A stretch of 64,000 nucleotides of DNA from NCBI GenBank assembly GCA_964199315.1, contig OZ116706.1, forward strand, positions 2,232,001 to 2,296,000. The letters are read 5' to 3'. This stretch comes from Orbicella franksi. Taxonomy: Eukaryota. The position numbers and the translations under genes were made by a program. Position 1 is the first letter of the stretch; each line of letters starts with the position of its first letter. Positions 8,648 through 56,692 of the stretch are shown here, in pieces. The notes under the pieces are model-generated. The model worked only from the letters and a program-made list of their open reading frames with translations, did not search any database and had not been told where the DNA came from.

Positions 8648-10175
8648 TACTGAAGACAAATGACACCCTTTTGCTATCTATGGCTTAAAGATTCCTTAAA
8701 ACCGACTGGAAAATTCATAAACAACTCGTAGAATCTGTCCGTCAGTTCTCTTCTGGAAGTTTTGATTCTGATTACGCATGTGCAGACACGTGACCAGTTG
8801 TCCGTGACGTAAACGGAGCGACTGCAGGCATAGGAGCCCCGCCCCAGACGGGAAATGGGAAGTTGATGAACATCTTAAGGCTTTGTTTGTTTTGAAGAAA
8901 CCTTAGTTAACCACAAGTAGTAGTTAATTTTAAACGCTTCTTTAAAATAACAGCTAGTTCTCCTTACGTCAGGTAGCGGGCATTACACGGGGAGAGGAAG
9001 TTATATCGCTGCCTACACAGGTTAATACGTTGAGTGTATCTTTTGTTGCTACAAGACTTTCATTTACTCACAAAGGTTGCAGGTTATAAGGGGAAAAAAG
9101 AAAGAAGAAATAAAAGCGCCCCTTAGCACACAGGCGAAATTAGAACGTTTTCTTCCGATTAGTTATGAGTTAACCAAAGTAATGAAACTAATATATATGA
9201 CGTGGAAATACTAATGTATTGGCGACAAAACGAGGAGCCCGCATGCAGCGCAGTGTTCTATACACAGGAAGCCAAGTTGCGTGCAGATTTTCTCTGTATT
9301 TTCGTCAGTTCCTCTAAGACTCATATGACCCATATCTGATGACCACTGTATCGGTCATTTGCGTTAATAATGGTCTCTACGAGAGCTAGTTTGTTCATAG
9401 TTAACATTAAAGAAGCTTCTATTGGTTAGTTGTATGAGCACACATAACCACCTTTTGCGTTTTGCTAAGTTTTGCGTAGGGTTAACCCCAATTGCAAAAT
9501 AGCAAACAAAAACATACAACAAAGAACTTTGTCAGGTTTCATAACCATTTCCCTCTATTAACTATGCTCTGTTCTAATTAAGAATTAGATTATCAGCCGT
9601 CTATTTCTTTGCATACTGCTGGCGCGCCAGAAATTTGAATTGACTAATCAGGATTCAGAAAGCTGGAAAAGCTTTATTGTCCTGATACATGCTGACGTCA
9701 ATGTACATGATGTAGGCCAAGGCTATGCGTTATGTTAACAGGAAAGGCATTGAAGGCTGGCAACGTTTCTCACTGGAGACAGAATTAAGTATTCACAAAA
9801 AGGGATTTATAATTCCAGAAGCCATAACAGGTTGTAAGAGGTGAAAAATATGAAACATTTTGTGTCTCCAAGCTTTTAATTTTGCGCCAAAAATGGATCG
9901 CCCGTGTCCGGCAACTCACTCGTAACGGGTAAGATCAGGCACCATAATAGTTGTGTTATTTTTCGACTGAAAGGCAACGAAGTGACTCACCCAAAAAAAT
10001 GGTGAAATTAATATTGAGAACACTGAAAAAACAAAACCTGTTTTTATTTCTGTTTTGGTTTTAGAGTGTGATAAATTCCAGAATGTTGGCCGTAGCCATT
10101 TGTCTAGTTTTGTTTAAATCGTGAATAAAATCAAATCCAATCAAGGAAGGACAACACGACTTTTGTTTAAGCTGG

Positions 10176-15324: not shown

Positions 15325-28228
<12,904 letters not shown>

Positions 28229-28542
28229 GTTGTTGTTATACGGGCCATCACGAAAAGACAATGAATTTACCCATAAGCTACTGCGTTGTTTGCTTTTCGC
28301 TTTGCGCGCCGAGATGATCGAATCAATCGCTTCTCGAAAAATAATCGGAAAATCGATAATCACTCGAGCTTGAATTGGGTGATGTAAGATTTCTACTTCT
28401 TTCGCCGGTGAAGAGCTTGCAAAAGTATTCTTAAATCCTTGCAATCGAAAGAGTTTATACGGGAAGATTTGCTTTCCGTTTTTAACTATAGCGGGAAGGA
28501 AGTGAAAGAACTTCTTCTTCCGTCTTAGCTTTGAACGCGAAA
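28229..28542. promoter_or_regulatory. Probable bidirectional promoter shared by HCFC1 and CDC123
   Basis: Only 314 bp separate the two divergent ATGs; GGAAG/CTTCC ETS-like motifs at about 28495-28525. Confidence 0.6.
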
Positions 28543-29559
28543 ATGAAACGAGAACACGTGTTGAGCTGTAATTTTTCAGTGTGGTACCCCAAGTTCAAGA
28601 ACATTACGATCAGAAGTCGGGTAATTCCTCTTTCGAAGGAGTTTGTTGATTATTTAAAGGCTGATAACGTTGTTTTGCCTGGTCAACCTGTCGTCACGAG
28701 AGATTCAGACGAAGAAATCGAGAGCGACTCCGAAGAATGGCAGGCTTTGGACGAAGATCCAAACGAACACACGATCACAGCTCCCGAATTCAATGAAATT
28801 GATTCTGCAATCAAAGAAGCTATAATTGAATTAGACGGGGCTGTCTTCCCTAAATTGAACTGGAGCTCTCCACTGGACGCTTCTTGGATTTCTTGTGATG
28901 GAACACTGAAATGCAAGTGTCCAAATGACATCTATCTTCTACTCAAGAGCTCTGATAACATATGCAGAACACTCTTTGAAACTTTCAAGCACTGTGAAGA
29001 TGGAGAAGGAGCGTTGGAGAATGGCTTTGAGCTTGTACTTCGGAAATGGAAGGATATCAATCCAGGAATGGAATTCCGGTGTTTTGTGAAAGACCACAAG
29101 CTGATTGCGATCTCCCAAAGAGACATTGCAAGCTGTTATGAATTCATTGAACAAACTGAACAGGATATTTGCAGTGATATAGCAAACTTTTTCAAGAGCA
29201 AAATTGCTTATAAATTTCCTGACAGTTCTTACACATTTGATGTGTACAGATCTGCAGGTCAGAAGGTTTTACTGATCGATTTTAATCCATTTGGGGCTCA
29301 AACAGACCCCTTGTTTTTCACATGGGATGAACTCAGCGATCCTTCCATGTCCGTCAGTGATAATGATGATGAGTTTAAAGGTGTGTTTAAGTACGTAACA
29401 AGTGCAGGAGGGGTGCAGCCTCATGCATCTCACTTAAGCAGAATGCCAACTGACATTGTTGATTTAGCCTGTGGCAATGACATCAATAAATTAGTTGATC
29501 TTCTGAATTTAAGAAATTTGATTGGACGTTCTGGCGATGAATCAGATGAGGACCAATGA
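28543..29559 (+). CDS. CDC123: Cell division cycle protein 123 (ATP-grasp eIF2 assembly factor), single exon, 338 aa
   Basis: [83 protein letters not shown]; uninterrupted ORF. Confidence 0.96.
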
Positions 29560-30501: not shown

Positions 30502-33500
30502 ATGTTTCGATGGAAGGTTTCTCATTTCCTCAGTTTGCCAAGTGAGAGTAAGCAACTGAGTTCTTTGATCAGGAGAGGAATTGCGATCAGAAGGAGTTTG
30601 AGTTATGTGACTCTTGGCGAAGGAAAGAACGTAAGATATGGTTCTAAAATAGCTAAAATGTAGCGCTGTTTACGTGAGTTCAATTTGTAAACAATATCAC
30701 GTTTTTCACTAGACAGCAATAAGCTAACCTCACTTACAACGATTAAGCTGTCACTTCCAATAGGGCACTGCAGAGGCATTGTAATACATTTTTATCCGTC
30801 ATAATTACGGCAAACTTACGTATAAATCCTGAAATACCCCGTTTGTTAGTACTCACTTTATGGACAAATCTCTGTGAAAGACTTACTTGTCAGAGCAAAG
30901 TCCCTGGGCCCCTGGCGGGGGGAGGGAACCCCCTGAAAAATTGGGTGGCGGTGTGCGGCGCGCTTCCCAAAACCCTTGCCCCATTTATGACCATAATCTG
31001 CTATTTTCCCTTTCCTATTCATGACCTGACTAAAAATTTGATACCCTATTTATGGCCATTGCGGCTAGCACAGTTGCTCTAAACATAATTTACGAAGGGC
31101 TTTTGTTGATGGCAGTTTTGTAATTCCACATGTGAAATTATAAATTAACACTGAAACTTTGCGCCAAAATTAAGGAGTAATTTTTCACCCATGATATTGA
31201 AGGAATAATATAATGTGTATTTGCCACTTTCCTTAGTTGTTTTAAAGCTTTCTAAGTATTAAAGTACTTTGTTTGGTAGAAAGGTGTACCAGTTAAAGCA
31301 TGGGTAAAGGGTGTTCCTGTTGAAAAAGATGCCACAGATCAACTGCTGTCTTTGGCGAAGTTGCCAATCATCCACTCGCATGTGGCAGCCATGCCTGATA
31401 TGCATCTTGGGAAGGGTGCATGTGTTGGTTGTGTCGTTGCTACAGTTGATGCAATTATTCCTGCCGCAGTTGGGGTGGTAAGTACGAACTTTCATGAACA
31501 ATGATATACAAGCTTTAGGTTTCTGTCTGGACTGTATGGCTATACAGGATGTTAGTCAGTTAGGGACAAATCCTCAGACTCCTCAAGTCATAGTAGATGT
31601 ACAAAATGAGGCTGATAAAGTAGAACCCAGTGATCGAAGATCTTTTAAACATATCCTTTGGCTAATAAAACAGATTTATTGAGGGTATTCTATCAATAAA
31701 TGCAAAAAATTAAAAGCCATCTTTGTATTCTGAAGCTCTTCTATCCAGTCATGGCCAGAAACTTATTTGCATGGTACATGTTTGTCATGTTTAATTATAA
31801 AGGACCAAAGTCATCATCATCATCACAACATGGTGTTATGACACCAATAGTGCGAGTACATGTCCCGCCATTGTGCCCTGTATGCTGCCATGGACTCAAG
31901 ATCTTGATCCGTTCCATTCCATTCCATTCCATTTCATCCTAGTTTAGCATCACGTTCCACAGCATCTCTCCATCGAGCGTGACACCTTCCACTTCTTTGC
32001 TTCACATTCTCAGGCCTCCATTGTTGGGAAATCTTTGTTGACCCATAAAGGACCAAAGCTATTGTTTAGAAATTGTGGACATGAAATGTTGCATAAGATG
32101 ATAATAGTTTTGTTAAGTTTCCTTTAAAGGATTATACTTGCATAAATTTTGCCAAGCAGAAGCTGTGATGAGAAATAAAGTTTTAAAAGAAATGTTTGGC
32201 AATCATTTAAAGGAGCACACACTTCTCAAGGACAGATAAAATTTAGCTTTTCGTTCACTTTTTAACTAAAGGACATTGGATGTGGAATGATGGCAGTTAG
32301 GACAACAATGTCAGCAGAACATCTGCCAGATTCACTGAAGAACCTTCGAAGAGCCATTGAACAAGCTGTACCACATGGACGAACCAATCAGGTGCATTGT
32401 AAAATACATATATTATCATATTTCCTTTATTGTCATTCTTGATACATTGTGCAGTTCCAGAAAATTTCCATACTCCCTCCACAGAAGGGATTACAATTTC
32501 CTGGGGGCTTGGGGATTCTGTAAGACCAAAAAATTAAAGATTGTCATGTATGATGCCTAATTATTGAAATTTCCAGAGGGATGAGGGGGATCTTTTAAAA
32601 AATCCCTTCTGTGGGGGAGGTATGGATAACTTTTGGAACTACGCATTTTTATGATCAACATCTTATTTCTCTTAACAATGTCCACACACTGTCAAGTTGG
32701 CAAATGATGAGCTGTATTTCCTGTAATGGATCATGTAGAGAGGCTCCACCTGAAAGGATTTTTTAAGGGGAGAGGCTGGAGGTATACAAATGGGCTGGGA
32801 ACAAAATGATTTAAGTATAGCAGGGGTTACAAATACACCAAATTTGGTGTATTTTAGATGAAAAAGTTGTCTGTGAGTCCAAAGAATTTCTAAAGAGAGT
32901 TACTTTGACTTTAATGTAGAGTCCAGAAATGTGTAGTAGAATTTTTTTTCTGCCAGTCAAAATTTTAATGATTGTTGGATTAAAAAAAAAATTCTTAATT
33001 GACCACTCCCCCAAAGGTGTTTGTAAGTGCCAATGGAAACAAATGATGAAACAAATACAATGTCAAAGGAACATAACATGGTTAAAAATCTCAACTAGTA
33101 GGAGGCGGACCAGTTAGCTATTTACAAGCACGGCCGAGGAGTTGAACTCGGGACTACTGAGGACAACATCAGCCAGTGGTCAGAATGGGACTTAAATCCC
33201 AGACCTCCGCATTTCAAGTCCTGTGCCCAAACTACATGTAATTGACCACGCTGCCTCCATTTGCATCATTTGAATGAAGTTTGTCCATTGCTGTTTGTGT
33301 AACACATTTGCTACTGCTTGTTGTTTCAGCCACAATGTTTGATTGTAATCATTTTGCAACAGTTCAATCTCCTTTGTATGCATTTTCATCTAATGGTGAC
33401 ATGAATTACCCACCTTCCATGACCCTGCATTTTCAAAATTGTCTACAAAATTTGTGGAGAAGGAGTCAAAGCATGAAAGGGACTACAAAGGGTAAGAAAA

Positions 33501-36500
33501 GATCTAAACCCTGCTATAGAGAAGGGTCGGGAAAATTAAAACATACATTGGTATTTAAAAGGGCTTTTAATGGTGTAGGAAATGGATGCAGTATTTTTCA
33601 AGATATGTGAAAGGTTTATCCATTCATTTTCCATGAAAGGTACATTAAAGGGTTCCTTTTTCTGTCAAACATAGTATATAAAATAATGGAAAAAGATTTG
33701 GCTGTTCCCTGTATAAAACTTTGTTCAGCAGTGCTCTACTCCCTTTGACTGGGGTTATGTGTCACATTAGCATGACAAAGACTGGTGGTTTAACTCAGGG
33801 TTAAAACCTAACTCTTAATTTTGACCTCAGGGTGGCAAAGGTGATCTTGGAGCCTGGAAGGCAAGCGGCATTCCAGACTCTGTTGTGACAGAGTGGAATA
33901 AACTAAAGAAAGAATATGAATACATCTGTAGTCGACAACCCATGGCCAAGGCAAAGAACAATGCTAATCATCTGGGAACTCTAGGCACAGGAAATCACTT
34001 CATTGAGGTAATTATGTCGTTTGGGTTAATATACAATGTTGTTGTCAACATTGTTTTGTTCCAGAAAATATCTATACCCCTCCCACTAAGGATGTTTTGG
34101 TTTGAACCCCCCACCCTATCCCCCTGGAAATTCCAGTTTTGATTCACAATTTCTTTTGAAAATTTTGGCTCTTGCTACCCCCCTCCTCCTTGGAATTTTC
34201 AATAGAGAGCTTAAGAAATGATGATGGTGATGTCAGGGACGACACCTGGAAAAAAAATGATTTTATATTTTACCATGGAATTATCTAGATCTGCTCACTA
34301 CTTCATGTGGTCTTAATCCCTACTCAAGCTAAAGATGTAATGCCAGTGATCAATTCCATAAGAAAATACAAAAAAAATTAGCCATTGTGGTTCATGTTCT
34401 CAAGATATGCAAAATTTGGTCATTTCACGTTGTTGTTTTGCCGAGGATGGTTATGAAATGTAGAATAATTTATAACACACTGCATAACAATTGTTCTGCT
34501 TATTAAACCTTTTGTTTAGTGAGGTTGTCATTGCAGTTGCTGTTGTGGTTTGTTTAAACTTCCTAATAATCCTCCTTTGGGTGGGGGTGTGGGTATTTTC
34601 TGGAAGCACACATTATGATGATTAGGTTTCCTGGCAGTAAAGCAGCTGGCATGTGAATAATATTGCTGATGAGTTCTGAATGATGCTTCAGTGAAATTAT
34701 GCGAGATACAGTAGCTCACAAGACACCCAACAGAACAGTAAAACAGTATGTCGTCAATGATAGGATCTCCCTAGAAAGTGAAAACTGTCACTCTTTTAGG
34801 ACTGGCATTTTTTCTTTGAAATTTATCTCAACTGTTTTTAATTCTCTTTAAGATGTGTCTTGACGAGGAGGACATGGTGTGGTTCATGCTGCATTCAGGG
34901 TCACGTGGGCCAGGGAACAGGATTGGAACAGTGTACATTGAGCTTGCCAAGAATGACATGCTGAAACTAGACAAACAAGTAAAGGTATAAGCACTTTTTC
35001 AAAACTAATATCTCACTGTTATAATGTGGAAGGTACAATAACTATGACATTTGTCTAAAAGGTTGATGGTTTGCATGTAACGTTTCGTGCAACGTATTTC
35101 GCAGTTTTGTGGCTCTGTTACGGGGCAAAGTTAGTCAAATTGTGCAAAATGTTTCTAATTTGTCCAACCTACAAATATTTGTAGCAGCATTGCAAAGAGA
35201 GGGCCTGGGGGGCCGCCATTTTGTTCACAACGGTATACTGCTAGGCTACTCACTATCTACTAAACAATTCTATGAGGTAATAGTTGATGAGGCCGAGGGC
35301 CGAATCAACTATCACCTCATAGAAATCGAGAGCAAATAATGCAATTGTTTTAGTAGAATTCTAATTAGACTTTCCTTCAAATAACGATTCCAATTATTTC
35401 TGGTCTCAGTATTAAACTTCACGCTTTAGAGAGTTCGCGCGGACTGAATGGTCAATTTGGCATTTGCAGTTGTGTACGCGCTTATCAGCTTCTTTCAAAA
35501 ATTTCGAGCTTTTTTAATTCAAGAAACCGTAAATGTCCTCCTTTTAGTCTTCTCAGGAGTTTGAGTATCTATTTATTTCTAAATGTTCTTTCAAAACTTC
35601 GGAGAAACAAGGAAACGTTGCAATTTTGTCGACCACACCAAGCCACTGCACACTAATGGTCGATAGTGTGCAATGGCTTAGCCAATCAGATTGTAGCATT
35701 CGCATTAGTATCCTACATAAAAGAATTCTACTAAAACAGAATAGATAGTGAGTAGCGTAGCCAATCAGAGAACGGCATTGGTGACTGAATGCTATTGGCA
35801 TTATACTAAAGAGGATTGTCTCGTGATAACTGTCATGTATAGATGTACCACGTGACTTGAATATGGAGTGCAAGGATAAAAATGTGCAAGGAAAAAAATA
35901 AATAGGGGTTATTAAAACTTTTGATGACTTTTGAAGGTGAGAAGTTTGTATGGTTTGTTTCATTTTATCCTTCCCAGGTTGAAAAAGATCTAGCATACCT
36001 CAGTGAGGGCTCAAAGAACTTTGAAGACTACGTATTTGCAGTGACATGGGCGCAAAAATTTGCTCGTATCAACCGCTACATAATGATGTCCAATGTACTC
36101 AGAGCGGCGCATGAATGTGCAGATATGCCGCCATTTGATGTGGATCCATCGAGCAAGGCTGTCAATTGTCATCACAACTACGTCAAGGTGGAAACGCATT
36201 TCGGAAAAGAAGTGTTTCTAACGAGGAAAGGAGCAGTAAGTTAGTTGTAATGCTCAAGTGAAGGATGTAGCGATGTTGCTAGTCTCAATGAATTTAAGTG
36301 TGCCCTGGTAGAACTGCATCGCAAGTAATAGTTCTTGTTTGCACGCAAAAGGAATCTGGCGTCGAGTATTTAGATGTATCTCAAGCGAGACCCCAAGTTT
36401 TCTAATTTTGCGTATTCAGACCTTTCAGTTTTCGTCTCGAGTCCCTTAATGAGACAACGAGCCTGAGTTTTCTGAGACCGGATAATGAACGAGGCGCTGC

Positions 36501-37836
36501 TCCGCTGAGTATCGTTCATAAAATATGAAGGCCAGTTGTCAGATAAATTAGCTATTTTAGTCCAAAAATCAGAATAATTTTCCCTTTGAACTTGAAGGTA
36601 ACGCGCACGCTTATGGACAACGGCAGGAGCTAACATCGTTCCTCAAATTAGATAATGTCCCGCAGATAAGTATTCAAGTATGCGAACTTTTAGTTTTCCC
36701 GCCATACGGACGTTATTGTCGTTATTGCCGATTTAGAAATGGAAAATAGCGAAGGACGATTGTTTTGAATTTCCCTTAACCGTCACGTTTCTGCTCGTCA
36801 CGGAGAGTTAGGAATCATACCGGGATCCATGGGAGCACGGTCGTTCATTGTCAAGGGCAAAGGAAATCCTGAAGCTTTTCACAGGTATGTTTTGAAGTTT
36901 CGGAAAACAGTGAAATTTCACAGCAAATCGTCGTAAACCCGAAGAGGTTCCGATTCTTATCCTTCAATCAGAAATTGCACTTGTGACGTCAGCTCGTGTG
37001 ACGTCAGCCACGCCATTGGTTCCAGGAAACCAATGCAAACCCTTTCCTGAAGACTCCGGGCTCACTAAATGTTCGGTGCTTTTAACTGCGTGTTATTTTT
37101 TATTATGCGGTAAGAGGTGGTTTCAACTTTTTACATAGATAGATAATATTAAATTACACAGAAAAATACAAGAAAAGTTGCTTTCCACGAATGCCGTGCC
37201 TTACAGAACTTATTTGAGTAGACGTTTGAATTGCCCAAGGGTCTCTGCTCCCCATAGTCACAAGGAAGACTGTTCCAAAGAATGGCGACACCATAGCTAA
37301 AGCTATTTTTGTAATAGTTTGTGCGCGGCAATGGAACATTGAGTTTATTCTCGGAGTCCCTCAGGTTATATGCGGTTTATCGCTTTTCAAATTTAGAACT
37401 TAGATAGTCTGAAGATAACCCGTGCACAGACCTGTAAACGATCGTAGCTCTTCGAATTTGCTGTTAGCAAGCTAGATTTTTCCAGCGTAGGAGTTCAAAT
37501 AGGTGACCAGTATCTTTTTCGTCTACGGATGAAACCTTCGTATGTGACCACTCAAATGCAGCAAAGTTTGTTATGCTCGGTCTAAATGATTCTATTTAAT
37601 TTCTCCGCAGTTGTAGCCACGGTGCAGGAAGAAGCATGTCTCGAACCAAAGCCAAGAAAATGTTTACAATTGATGATCACGTGAATGCGACACAAGGCGT
37701 GGAGTGTCGTAAGGACGCTGACGTCATTGACGAAACACCAATGGCGTATAAGGATATCGATGACGTCATGGCGGCACAGAGTGACTTGGTAGACGTTGCT
37801 CACACGCTAAAACAAGTGTTATGCGTGAAGGGATGA
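30502..37836 (+). CDS. rtcB: Bacterial-type RtcB RNA 2',3'-cyclic phosphate/5'-OH ligase with an N-terminal presequence, 8 exons, ~445 aa
   Basis: Exons 30502-30630, 31280-31477 (VPVKAWVKGVPVE..AMPDMHLGKG..IIPAAVGV), 32272-32391 (DIGCGM..VPHGRT), 33831-34007 (HLGTLGTGNHFIE), 34853-34984 (WFMLHSGSRGPGNRIG; alternative donor at 34978), 35978-36235 (DLAYL..NCHHNYV..TRKGA), 36787-36884 (VSARHGELGIIPGSMG), 37611-37836 (CSHGAGRSMSRTKAKK..DETPMAYKDIDDVMAAQSDLV..LKQVLCVKG*). Co-linear with recalled E. coli RtcB. Intron 6 ends in AC rather than AG. Confidence 0.95.
30900..31110. mobile_element. DNA-transposon-derived repeat fragment in RtcB intron 1
   Basis: GGGGG..AAAAATTGGGTGGCGGTGTGCGGCGCGCTTCCCAAAACCCTT..CCCTATTTATG subrepeats, recognised from memory as a common anthozoan repeat end. 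Confidence 0.45.
31810..32050 (-). mobile_element. LINE (RTE-like) 3' fragment in RtcB intron 2
   Basis: Minus-strand translation QQWRPENVKQRSGRCHARWRDAVERD resembles the RTE ORF2 C-terminus; (TGA)n tail. Confidence 0.5.
32448..32645. mobile_element. MITE in RtcB intron 3
   Basis: TIRs TGTGCAGTTCCAGAAAATTTCCATAC...GTATGGATAACTTTTGGAACTACGCA. Confidence 0.65.
33060..33258 (-). mobile_element. tRNA-derived SINE in RtcB intron 3
   Basis: Minus-strand head GGAGGCAGCGTGGTC...GGATTTAAGTCCC with a body containing GAGTTCAACTCCTCGGCC. Confidence 0.55.
34052..34612. mobile_element. MITE (same family as 32448-32645) with a second MITE nested at 34203-34565, in RtcB intron 4
   Basis: Outer ends TGTTTTGTTCCAGAAAATA...TATTTTCTGGAAGCACACA; inner TIR TAGAGAGCTTAAG matches the 304-667 family. 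Confidence 0.65.
35268..35790. repeat. Hairpin-bearing interspersed repeat in RtcB intron 5
   Basis: Hairpin TTCTATGAGGTAATAGTTGAT-loop-ATCAACTATCACCTCATAGAA and further internal inverted repeats. Confidence 0.55.
37150..37350 (-). mobile_element. LINE (L2/CR1-like) 3' fragment in RtcB intron 7
   Basis: Minus-strand LPRTNYYKNSFSYGVAILWNSLP, typical of the CR1/L2 ORF2 C-terminus, followed by a GCACGGCATTCGTGGAAAGCA tail. Confidence 0.75.
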
Positions 37837-56456: not shown

Positions 56457-56692
56457 ATCATATATGAACTCAGTTAAATGGCTTTGCTCTCCATGAGTTC
56501 TCGTAGCTCAGTGGATAGAGTGCCCGCCCGGTGTTCGGGAGGTCATGGGTTCGATTCCTGTCGGGGACTCAGAATCTTTCTTTGTCCCACGCTCGTGTCA
56601 TGTTGATTAATTCACCTTCACAAATTTTTGCCGTGTTTTTCACTCCCCCAAGCAAGTTGAACTAAGATGGCGTCCGAAACCGTGAAAAGGCC
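55867..56692. mobile_element. MITE hosting the tRNA-like insertion
   Basis: TIRs GGCCTTTTCACGG..GCCATCTT / AAGATGGC..CCGTGAAAAGGCC, flanked by TA. Confidence 0.65.
56303..56622 (+). mobile_element. tRNA-like partial-tandem retro-insertion (one 261-bp unit plus ~59-bp terminal redundancy)
   Basis: 13-bp TSD AATTTTTGCCGTG at 56290-56302 and 56623-56635; internal tRNA-like cloverleaf at 56495-56570 with A box (TAGCTCAGTGG) and B box (GGTTCGATTCC). Confidence 0.88.

What the first reader, a model, noticed from the sequence alone, without database searches (positions are those of the whole stretch)
30502..30630. RtcB exon 1 looks like a cleavable mitochondrial presequence
Seen: MFRWKVSHFLSLPSESKQLSSLIRRGIAIRRSL|SYVTLGEGKN has 7 Arg/Lys, 1 acidic residue and 8 Ser in the first 35 aa, and an R-X-L|S (R-3 type) processing motif at R31-S34. 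Similarity to the bacterial N-terminus (recalled MNYELLTTENAPVKMW versus SYVTLGEGKNKGVPVKAW) begins right at that site, and the extension sits on its own phase-0 exon. Established: hexacoral mitochondria carry a group I intron in nad5 (often also cox1), encode very few tRNAs and import the rest; bacterial RtcB repairs broken tRNA/rRNA. Inference: a mitochondrial RNA ligation or repair system in this lineage, possibly acting on mt-rRNA, imported tRNAs or group I intron-related RNA ends.
Basis: partly seen in the sequence, partly recalled or inferred. Interest (0 to 1): 0.85.

Follow-up and report, generated by a model that had tools for sequence, protein, structure and literature searches.

The report
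Presequence-like leader on coral bacterial-type RtcB
Stony corals and at least one sea anemone carry an extra, bacterial-type RNA-repair ligase gene, and its first exon adds a short, positively charged leader that is expressed, conserved for hundreds of millions of years and looks like a mitochondrial import signal, although import itself has not been shown.

Summary
Exon 1 (30502-30630) encodes the stated 43 residues. A metatranscriptome contig joins 30630 directly to 31280. The NCBI model for Orbicella faveolata has the same N-terminus. The gene is an 8-exon, E. coli-type RtcB (about 60% identity, all catalytic residues kept). It forms one clade in Scleractinia plus the anemone Actinostola, with shared introns and shared HCF/CDC123/RtcB gene order.

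The first 32-33 residues lie upstream of the position that aligns with the bacterial Met1. Every orthologue has such a leader of 24-42 aa. The leaders have net charge +4 to +10, no Asp, more Arg than Lys, and an invariant Arg 3-5 residues before a conserved Tyr/Phe. Leader identity is only about 35%, against about 87% for the enzyme body. AlphaFold gives residues 1-31 as unstructured.

This fits a cleavable matrix presequence, but three things limit the claim. Helical amphipathicity is not above shuffled controls. No trained predictor could be run. Localisation is untested.

The same RtcB clade is reported as mitochondrial in trypanosomes and diplonemids, so the idea has precedent outside animals. 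The gene was not detected in other cnidarians in the database, including the model anemones, which weakens a link to the nad5 group I intron. I put mitochondrial targeting at about 0.55.

The parts
30502..30597 (+). Leader, residues 1-32: the eukaryote-specific N-terminal extension upstream of the position that aligns with bacterial Met1
   Evidence: Translation. E. coli M1 aligns with coral L33. Net charge +6, 0 Asp, 1 Glu. AF2 pLDDT below 50 for residues 1-31.
30592..30603 (+). R31-S32-L33|S34: candidate MPP R-3 (or R-2 plus Icp55) processing motif
   Evidence: An Arg lies 3-5 residues before the conserved Tyr/Phe in all 7 lineages compared. This is a pattern match only; cleavage has not been shown.
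30598..30630 (+). Rest of exon 1 (L33-N43), homologous to the first residues of bacterial RtcB
   Evidence: Alignments A2/A3.
30631..31279 (+). Intron 1 (GT..AG, phase 0)
   Evidence: Removed in contig L002. An intron at the same position occurs in Actinostola L082.
31280..31477 (+). Exon 2
   Evidence: tblastn with E. coli RtcB, 61% identity. Joined to exon 1 in L002 and L003.
32272..32391 (+). Exon 3 (DIGCG metal-binding motif)
   Evidence: Spliced in L003.
33831..34007 (+). Exon 4 (GTGNHFIE)
   Evidence: The exon 4-5 junction is seen in L002.
34853..34984 (+). Exon 5; the distal of two in-frame donors is the one used
   Evidence: The L002 junction reads ...CAAGTAAAG|GTTGAA. L003 has KRVKVDRD.
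35978..36235 (+). Exon 6 (NCHHNY)
36785..36786 (+). 3' splice site of intron 6. It reads AC in this window and AG in the O. faveolata reference and in Actinostola.
36787..36884 (+). Exon 7
   Evidence: The junction ...KGA|VSAR is present in L003 cDNA and in all orthologues.
37611..37836 (+). Exon 8 with SCSHGAGR (the GMP-accepting His) and the stop codon
28543..29559 (+). Intronless CDC123/D123 gene directly upstream. Together with an HCF-like kelch gene on the minus strand it forms the conserved gene order.

Best explanation
The gene at 30502-37836 is a nuclear, intron-bearing, bacterial (E. coli RtcB1)-type 3'-phosphate RNA ligase. It was acquired once, before Actiniaria and Scleractinia split. 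Its first 32-33 residues form a cleavable matrix-targeting presequence.

Inferred steps: the leader is recognised by TOM/TIM23. The protein enters the mitochondrial matrix. MPP (possibly followed by Icp55) cuts near R31-S32-L33|S34, releasing an enzyme whose N-terminus matches the bacterial one to within one residue.

Inferred function: the mature Mn2+/GTP-dependent ligase seals RNA breaks with 2',3'-cyclic-phosphate or 3'-phosphate and 5'-OH ends in mitochondrial rRNA, imported or mitochondrion-encoded tRNA, or mRNA. This is RNA repair, as in bacteria, rather than intron splicing.

Shown here: gene structure, expression and exon 1-2 splicing, conservation of the leader's properties, an intact catalytic site, and the predicted fold. 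Inferred: import, cleavage site, substrates.
For: - Exon 1 is joined to exon 2 in RNA-derived contigs L002, L003, L084 and L086. The NCBI model has the same N-terminus.
- All catalytic residues are conserved (Ec D75, C78, N167, H168, H185, R189, H281, H337, R341, R345). Pfam RtcB scores 409 bits. The AF2 model has mean pLDDT 85 and TM 0.75 to solved RtcB structures.
- Leaders are present in Orbicella, Oculina, Pocillopora, Stylophora, Porites, Acropora, Montipora, two unnamed corals and Actinostola. They are 24-42 aa long, have net charge +4 to +10, zero Asp, more Arg than Lys, and no hydrophobic core typical of a signal peptide.
- Pooled over 7 lineages there are 5 acidic residues in 218 (P=3e-7 against the enzyme body, P=0.01 against random ORFs) and 45 basic residues (P=1e-4).
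- Leader identity averages 35% against 87% for the mature part, the usual pattern for presequences.
- An invariant Arg lies 3-5 residues before the conserved Tyr/Phe, at the exact start of bacterial homology.
- AF2 gives residues 1-31 pLDDT below 50 and no secondary structure; the fold starts at about residue 36.
- Precedent: EcRtcB1-clade RtcB is reported in the matrix of T. brucei and is predicted mitochondrial in diplonemids and Naegleria (PMC12699882).
- RNA ends carrying 2',3'-cyclic phosphate occur in animal mitochondria, where ANGEL2 acts on them (PMC13247085).
Against: - The maximal helical hydrophobic moment of the leaders (0.48-0.77 for 11-residue windows) is not above composition-matched shuffles (p 0.1-0.9). 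AF2 predicts coil, not helix.
- 4-8% of random open frames of this genome have similar charge features, and random sequences are known to mimic presequences.
- No trained predictor, localisation experiment or N-terminal proteomics result is available.
- Acropora and Montipora leaders carry 2-3 Glu.
- The conserved R-x-x-S could equally be a basophilic kinase or 14-3-3 site.
- The gene was not detected in Nematostella or Exaiptasia, or in any cnidarian other than Scleractinia and Actinostola, so it cannot be essential for mitochondrial features common to Hexacorallia.
- In this window the intron 6 acceptor reads AC, so this particular copy may be mis-spliced.
Confidence: 0.55

Rival explanations
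1. The leader is not an import signal. It is the translated remnant of upstream sequence recruited to give the transferred bacterial gene a start codon. It is kept as a short, basic, disordered tail that is harmless or mildly helps RNA binding or nuclear retention. The enzyme works in the cytosol or nucleus. There it could repair RNA cut by bacterial or viral ribotoxins, or circularise the abundant hammerhead-retrozyme RNAs of corals.
For: - Amphipathicity is not above shuffled controls.
- MTS-like charge features occur in 4-8% of random ORFs.
- Intron 1 lies inside the bacterial-derived ORF, so the leader looks like a 5' ORF extension rather than a shuffled presequence exon.
- The leader has no homologue in other proteins.
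- Acropora millepora expresses hammerhead retrozyme circRNAs at about 0.1% of total RNA, and RtcB circularises such RNAs in vitro (PMC7229834).
Against: - A neutral tail would not stay acid-free and net positive in lineages whose leaders have diverged to about 35% identity, including an anemone.
- The canonical metazoan RTCB already serves the cytosol and nucleus (established knowledge; not tested here).
- The leader has no Lys/Arg cluster of classical NLS type.
- The Rfam scan found no hammerhead in this window, though that says little about the whole genome.
Confidence: 0.28
2. The leader directs the enzyme elsewhere or to two places. Examples are dual mitochondrial/cytosolic distribution through alternative 5' ends, or regulated localisation through phosphorylation of the conserved R-x-x-S site.
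For: - NCBI lists N-terminally truncated isoforms starting at M81 in Orbicella, Oculina, Pocillopora and Acropora.
- The motif [KN]-R-x-x-S-[YF] fits basophilic kinase and 14-3-3 mode I-like consensus (sequence).
Against: - The M81 isoforms would lack the first 47 residues of the bacterial fold, so they are probably annotation by-products.
- No hydrophobic signal peptide or anchor is present.
- Animals have no plastid.
Confidence: 0.1
3. In this particular genome copy the gene is a defective allele. The intron 6 acceptor is AC instead of AG, so exon 7 cannot be joined normally, and the leader here has no present function whatever it does in other corals.
For: - The window reads ccgtcac|GTTTCT where the O. 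faveolata reference reads ccgtcag|GTTTCT; Actinostola also has AG.
- There are 6 nonsynonymous against 4 synonymous differences from the reference CDS.
Against: - It is a single base and could be an assembly or sequencing error, or a heterozygous variant.
- The reading frame is otherwise intact with all catalytic residues.
- Ten differences are too few to show relaxed selection, and derived changes occur in both copies.
Confidence: 0.15

Closest known systems
Escherichia coli RtcB (RtcB1-type bacterial 3'-phosphate RNA ligase of the rtcBA repair operon)
   Same: About 60% identity, collinear from residue 33 to the C-terminal ...CVKG. All metal-binding, guanylylation and phosphate-binding residues are the same, and the mature length matches (411-412 against 408 aa).
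   Different: The coral gene is nuclear with 7 introns and has no rtcA/rtcR neighbours. It is flanked by animal genes and carries a 32-33 aa N-terminal leader that is absent from all bacterial homologues examined.
Mitochondrial RtcB of Discoba (Trypanosoma brucei RtcB; Diplonema papillatum RTCB1; Naegleria), PMC12699882
   Same: It is a bacterial EcRtcB1-clade ligase encoded in a eukaryotic nucleus alongside a separate tRNA-splicing pathway, with an N-terminal targeting region. In T. brucei it is reported in the mitochondrial matrix.
   Different: Those are protists; the paper names no animal sequence in that clade, and its supplements mention no coral. Whether the coral clade is sister to the Discoba clade or an independent transfer was not tested. 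Localisation of the coral protein is only inferred.
Metazoan RTCB/HSPC117, catalytic subunit of the tRNA ligase complex
   Same: Same fold and chemistry (TM 0.75 to human RTCB; Pfam PF01139).
   Different: Only 22-26% identity against 60% to E. coli. It is not the orthologue of the archaeal-type RTCB. No evidence was sought for binding to DDX1, FAM98, CGI-99 or Archease.
Canonical N-terminal matrix-targeting presequence with an R-2/R-3 MPP site
   Same: N-terminal position, 24-42 aa, net positive, Arg-rich, Ser-rich, no Asp, fast sequence turnover, and Arg at -3 of a Ser/aromatic junction.
   Different: The amphipathic helix is not demonstrable above composition. There are no predictor scores and no cleavage data.

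Membership tests
RtcB family (PF01139) 3'-phosphate/5'-hydroxy RNA ligase | Profile match above the curated threshold | tested here: met
   Pfam RtcB 409 bits against a cut-off of 27, covering residues 64-445.
RtcB family (PF01139) 3'-phosphate/5'-hydroxy RNA ligase | Metal ligands, guanylylated His and phosphate-binding Arg (Ec D75, C78, N167, H168, H185, R189, H281, H337, R341, R345) | tested here: met
   All are identical in the coral protein and invariant in the 45-row alignment.
RtcB family (PF01139) 3'-phosphate/5'-hydroxy RNA ligase | RtcB fold | tested here: met
   AF2 mean pLDDT 85, pTM 0.84. Foldseek E 1e-27, TM 0.75 to 8odp and 1uc2.
RtcB family (PF01139) 3'-phosphate/5'-hydroxy RNA ligase | GTP/Mn2+-dependent sealing of 3'-P or 2',3'>P ends to 5'-OH ends | not testable with these tools
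   Needs recombinant protein and a ligation assay.
Bacterial EcRtcB1-type clade | Closest relatives are bacterial RtcB1-like proteins, collinear end to end | tested here: met
   59-67% identity to E. coli and to environmental bacterial RtcB. The cnidarian clade (support 100) is nested among bacterial sequences.
Metazoan tRNA-ligase-complex RTCB (HSPC117 orthologue) | Orthology to archaeal-type/eukaryotic RTCB | tested here: not met
   Human and zebrafish RTCB chains match only at E about 1e-27 and 22-26% identity.
Cleavable mitochondrial matrix presequence | N-terminal extension beyond the homologous mature protein, about 15-60 aa | tested here: met
   32-33 aa lie before the residue that aligns with bacterial Met1. 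Leaders are 24-42 aa in the 10 orthologues.
Cleavable mitochondrial matrix presequence | Net positive, Arg-rich, hydroxylated, nearly free of acidic residues | tested here: met
   Net +4 to +10, zero Asp, 5 acidic residues in 218 over 7 lineages.
Cleavable mitochondrial matrix presequence | Capacity to form an amphipathic helix | tested here: inconclusive
   Maximal hydrophobic moment 0.48-0.77 (11-residue windows), but not above shuffles (p 0.1-0.9). AF2 shows low-confidence coil.
Cleavable mitochondrial matrix presequence | MPP recognition motif (Arg at -2/-3) | tested here: met
   R-x-[LFS]|S-[YF] or a close variant occurs in all lineages, with the last Arg 3-5 residues before the conserved aromatic. 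This is a pattern match only.
Cleavable mitochondrial matrix presequence | Positive call by trained predictors (TargetP 2, MitoFates, DeepLoc 2) | not testable with these tools
   No such predictor is available. The protein-atlas feature search gave nothing on targeting.
Cleavable mitochondrial matrix presequence | Import into mitochondria and removal of the leader | not testable with these tools
   Experimental.
Discoba-type mitochondrial RtcB1 | Common descent with the kinetoplastid/diplonemid/Naegleria RtcB1 clade | not tested
   No Discoba sequence could be obtained, and the three protein searches were saturated by bacterial hits.

The most novel reading that the evidence does not exclude
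Hexacoral mitochondria use an imported bacterial RtcB as a regular step of mitochondrial gene expression, not only for damage repair. It could, for example, re-join RNA fragments produced when the many genes nested in the giant nad5 group I intron, or the tRNA-less gene junctions, are cut out by endonucleases that leave 2',3'-cyclic phosphate ends. This would be the first RNA ligase pathway in an animal mitochondrion, convergent with diplonemid transcript assembly.
Probability: 0.12. Interest if true: 0.85.

Novelty: new member of a known kind. Interest (0 to 1): 0.6.

Why it matters
Animals are thought to have a single RtcB, the archaeal-type RTCB of the tRNA ligase complex, and no RNA ligase is known in animal mitochondria. 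A 2026 review of the metazoan complex cites only diplonemids for a mitochondrial RTCB (PMC13247085).

Here reef-building corals turn out to have kept a second, bacterial-type RtcB for longer than the anemone-coral split. It carries a leader with the hallmarks of a matrix presequence. If import is confirmed, it would add an RNA repair or ligation activity to cnidarian mitochondria. Those organelles are already unusual: they have two tRNA genes, group I introns and slow sequence evolution. It would also be a second, independent case of the solution seen in trypanosomes and diplonemids.

The hypothesis is directly testable, through GFP fusions, an import assay and sequencing of 3'-phosphate RNA ends.

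If import is refuted, the gene is still a clean example of an ancient bacterium-to-animal transfer that gained introns and an N-terminal extension.

Tried and rejected
- **RNA reads.** The only read-laying run was rejected by a filter at 34358-34393 and still counted. Splicing evidence therefore came from assembled metatranscriptome and Logan contigs.
- **Pseudo-spliced query.** Aligning the eight exon peptides to E. coli RtcB scattered the fragments, so this was abandoned. Contig L003 then supplied a full-length spliced ORF to use as query.
- **Amphipathic-helix test against shuffles.** No signal.
- **Protein-atlas feature searches** on the leader and on the whole protein gave no targeting information.
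- **Origin of the leader.** An exhaustive search of the exon 1 peptide tested whether the leader was shuffled from another protein. The single hit is a VWA-repeat protein with ten weak repeats, which I judge to be chance.
- **Literature.** Searches for RtcB with coral or cnidarian terms, and for the locus identifiers, found no report of this gene.
- **Signal peptide or membrane anchor.** Rejected because there is no hydrophobic core.
- **Bacterial contamination.** Rejected because of the introns, the conserved animal gene order and the spliced transcripts.
- **U12-type intron 6.** Considered because of a CCCTTAAC motif near an AC acceptor. Rejected because the donor is GTAAGT and the O. faveolata reference has AG.
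- **P0008.** This protein seemed to lack a leader, but it is a gene-caller artefact: its cDNA reads through the leader up to the contig end.
Full report
**What is at the coordinates.** Window 30502-30630 (+) translates to MFRWKVSHFLSLPSESKQLSSLIRRGIAIRRSLSYVTLGEGKN. The ATG is the first start codon after an in-frame stop. The exon ends at a GTAAGA donor, and exon 2 begins at 31280 after a TTTGGTAG acceptor, in phase 0.

**Gene model.** tblastn with E. coli RtcB, taken from the annotated K-12 record, together with inspection of splice sites, gives eight exons:
- 30502-30630
- 31280-31477
- 32272-32391
- 33831-34007
- 34853-34984
- 35978-36235
- 36787-36884
- 37611-37836

The product is 445 aa. 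It differs at six residues from NCBI's Orbicella faveolata model XP_020604146.1 (P0143) and has an identical N-terminus. The window is 98.7-99.4% identical in DNA to the O. faveolata reference contig. It therefore comes from an Orbicella genome that is not that reference.

- A scan of JGI/ENA metagenome records with the exon 2 peptide returned contig L002. It reads window 30509-30630 and then continues at 31280 with no intron; over 160 nt there is a single synonymous difference. L002 also shows the exon 4-5 and exon 5-6 junctions, which settles the choice between two in-frame donors of exon 5. It retains introns 2 and 3, so it derives from a partly processed transcript.
- Contig L003, from another coral (about 85% nucleotide identity), carries a fully spliced 447-aa ORF with a comparable N-terminus.
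- Logan transcriptome contig L084 has an in-frame stop upstream of its start codon.
- Pocillopora cDNA L086 reads through the leader up to the contig end. The apparently leaderless protein P0008 is therefore a gene-caller artefact.

**What the protein is.**
- Pfam RtcB matches residues 64-445 at 409 bits.
- Identity to E. coli RtcB is about 60%, collinear to the C-terminal CVKG.
- E. coli D75, C78, N167, H168, H185, R189, H281, H337, R341 and R345 are all conserved.
- An AlphaFold2 model built on a 44-sequence alignment has mean pLDDT 85. It matches human and Pyrococcus RtcB structures at TM 0.75, but with only 22-26% identity.

The protein is thus a bacterial RtcB1-type enzyme, not the orthologue of the metazoan tRNA-ligase RTCB.

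**Distribution and origin.**
- Three protein searches and the cluster listings found orthologues in Orbicella, Oculina, Desmophyllum, Pocillopora, Stylophora, Porites, Acropora and Montipora, and in the sea anemone Actinostola. All further hits were bacterial, at 57-67% identity.
- The Actinostola fragment (76% identity) ranked above every bacterium, yet no hit from any cnidarian other than Scleractinia and Actinostola (for example Nematostella, Exaiptasia, Hydra or octocorals) appeared. This is non-detection in a word-filtered search, not proof of absence.
- In a FastTree phylogeny the cnidarian sequences form one clade (support 100). Actinostola is sister to Scleractinia, and the robust/complex coral split is recovered. 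The clade is nested among bacterial sequences.
- The gene order HCF-like kelch gene (minus strand), intronless CDC123, RtcB is the same in the window, the O. faveolata reference and Actinostola. L003 shows CDC123 followed by RtcB.
- Six of the seven intron positions are shared with Actinostola.

The transfer therefore predates the anemone-coral split, and the gene has been inherited vertically under strong constraint. Mature parts are about 87% identical among corals.

**The leader.** In the 45-row alignment, E. coli M1, N2 and Y3 align with coral L33, S34 and Y35. Residues 1-32 are therefore an addition, and the proposed cut after L33 would leave a protein one residue shorter than the bacterial one. 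Intron 1 thus sits inside the transferred ORF, and the leader looks like a 5' extension of that ORF rather than a shuffled presequence exon. Consistent with this, an exhaustive search of the exon 1 peptide against 1.84 billion representative proteins found only a chance match to a VWA-repeat protein.

Every orthologue has a leader:
- Oculina: MFRWKVGRVSSFPNERQHVISLLRGGTVIKRSSS
- Pocillopora: MSCWKIARSFSLRIGRKQLISLFRGRLAIKRRLS
- Porites: MFQWRLLFYSPGQRGIYLRKIINRSFS
- Acropora: MFRWSVRGLLLSFERRFELVAPLSKREGIVKRISS
- Actinostola: MFRVYGLNLRNKLLSLNHIHGNLRYLSS

Their properties:
- Lengths are 24-42 aa, net charge is +4 to +10, Asp is absent from all, and Arg exceeds Lys.
- Pooled over seven lineages there are 5 acidic residues in 218. 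This gives P=3e-7 against the composition of the enzyme body and P=0.01 against random open frames of this genome. There are 45 basic residues (P about 1e-4). The lineages are related, so these are not true probabilities. However, leader identity averages only 35% (21-37% to Actinostola), so most positions have turned over while the composition was kept.
- The last Arg lies 3-5 residues before the conserved Tyr/Phe in all lineages. This fits an MPP R-3 site, or an R-2 site followed by Icp55 trimming (established knowledge of presequence processing).
- No leader except one (P0002) has an apolar stretch suggestive of a signal peptide.
- AlphaFold assigns pLDDT below 50 and no secondary structure to residues 1-31. 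The first strand starts at residue 36.

**Limits of the presequence reading.**
- The maximal helical hydrophobic moment (0.48-0.77 for 11-residue windows) is in the range of amphipathic peptides. It is not higher than in shuffled versions of the same leaders (p 0.1-0.9), so amphipathicity beyond composition is not shown.
- In 408 random ATG-started open frames of the window, 8% reach net >= +6 with <= 1 acidic residue. Adding Arg >= 5 leaves 4%, and adding Ser+Thr >= 8 leaves 0.7%. A single such sequence is therefore weak evidence; the argument rests on conservation.
- No trained predictor was available, and the protein-atlas searches were uninformative.
- The conserved R-x-x-S could also be a kinase or 14-3-3 site.

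**Context from the literature.**
- Gray et al. 2025 (PMC12699882) place the mitochondrial RTCB1 of diplonemids, together with kinetoplastid and Naegleria proteins, in the same clade as E. coli RtcB1. They cite a sub-mitochondrial protein map that puts T. brucei RtcB in the matrix. They name no animal in that clade, and their supplements mention no coral.
[quoted passage not shown] It also notes that ANGEL2 processes 2',3'-cyclic phosphate ends in animal mitochondria, so suitable substrates exist there.
- Searches combining RtcB with coral or cnidarian terms, or using the locus identifiers, found no description of this gene.
- A possible non-mitochondrial substrate exists. Acropora millepora expresses hammerhead-retrozyme circRNAs at about 0.1% of total RNA, and RtcB circularises such RNAs in vitro (PMC7229834).

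**Assessment.** The best reading is a nuclear-encoded, bacterial-derived RtcB imported into mitochondria through a cleavable presequence and acting as an RNA repair ligase. I give it 0.55. The main rival is a cytosolic or nuclear enzyme with a basic tail that has no targeting role (0.28). Dual or regulated localisation gets 0.10.

All hexacorals share those mitochondrial features (Beagley 1998 and van Oppen 2002, as cited in PMC3598815), but the gene was detected only in Scleractinia and one anemone. Group I splicing also needs no ligase.

Separately, in this window the intron 6 acceptor reads AC where the O. faveolata reference and Actinostola read AG. This may be an error, a heterozygous variant or a defective allele. 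Ten coding differences from the reference (6 nonsynonymous, 4 synonymous) are too few to decide.

**Novelty and score.** The enzyme family and the idea of a mitochondrial EcRtcB1-type ligase are both known, so this is a new member of a known kind. It is, however, the first candidate in animals, and it appears unreported. Interest is 0.6: a real and conserved feature with a directly testable hypothesis, but the key claim of import rests on composition and conservation only.

Noticed in passing
window 36785-36786: The 3' splice site of RtcB intron 6 reads AC (ccgtcac|GTTTCT). The O. faveolata reference (L083 9402-9403) and Actinostola (L082) have AG. It may be a splice-site variant, a null allele or an assembly error.
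   Followed up: partly
window 28046-29559: An intronless CDC123/D123 ORF (28543-29559, +) and the first exon of an HCF-like kelch gene (minus strand, about 28046-28444) sit directly upstream of RtcB. The same three-gene order occurs in O. faveolata and in the sea anemone Actinostola. CDC123 is single-exon in all of them, which is unusual for an animal CDC123.
   Followed up: partly
L003 1-4974: One metatranscriptome contig holds the CDC123 ORF, a 2-kb spacer and the fully spliced RtcB ORF. This is either a read-through (bicistronic) transcript or an assembly join of pre-mRNA and mRNA reads.
   Followed up: no
L082 9790-10111: In Actinostola, exons 2 and 3 are fused (no intron 2). An apparent frameshift near 9930 splits the gene into two annotated products (89 aa and 331 aa). 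This is an assembly indel or a decaying copy.
   Followed up: no
window 34978-34984: Exon 5 has two in-frame GT donors 6 nt apart (CAA|GTAAAG|GTATAA). RNA contigs use the distal one, which adds Val-Lys.
   Followed up: yes
window 30847-30926: A GC-rich 80-bp piece inside intron 1 is inverted, or matches on the opposite strand, between the window and the O. faveolata reference (L083 3436-3515). It is probably a small palindromic repeat element.
   Followed up: no
window 18442-18514 and 56497-56569: These are the only two Rfam gathering-level hits in the window, both tRNA-like. No hammerhead ribozyme was found in the window.
   Followed up: no
P0145, P0009, P0130, P0011 (NCBI isoforms): Several corals have annotated 365-aa isoforms that start at M81 (MPDMH...). 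They lack the leader and the first 47 residues of the bacterial fold. They reflect either alternative 5' ends or annotation by-products.
   Followed up: no
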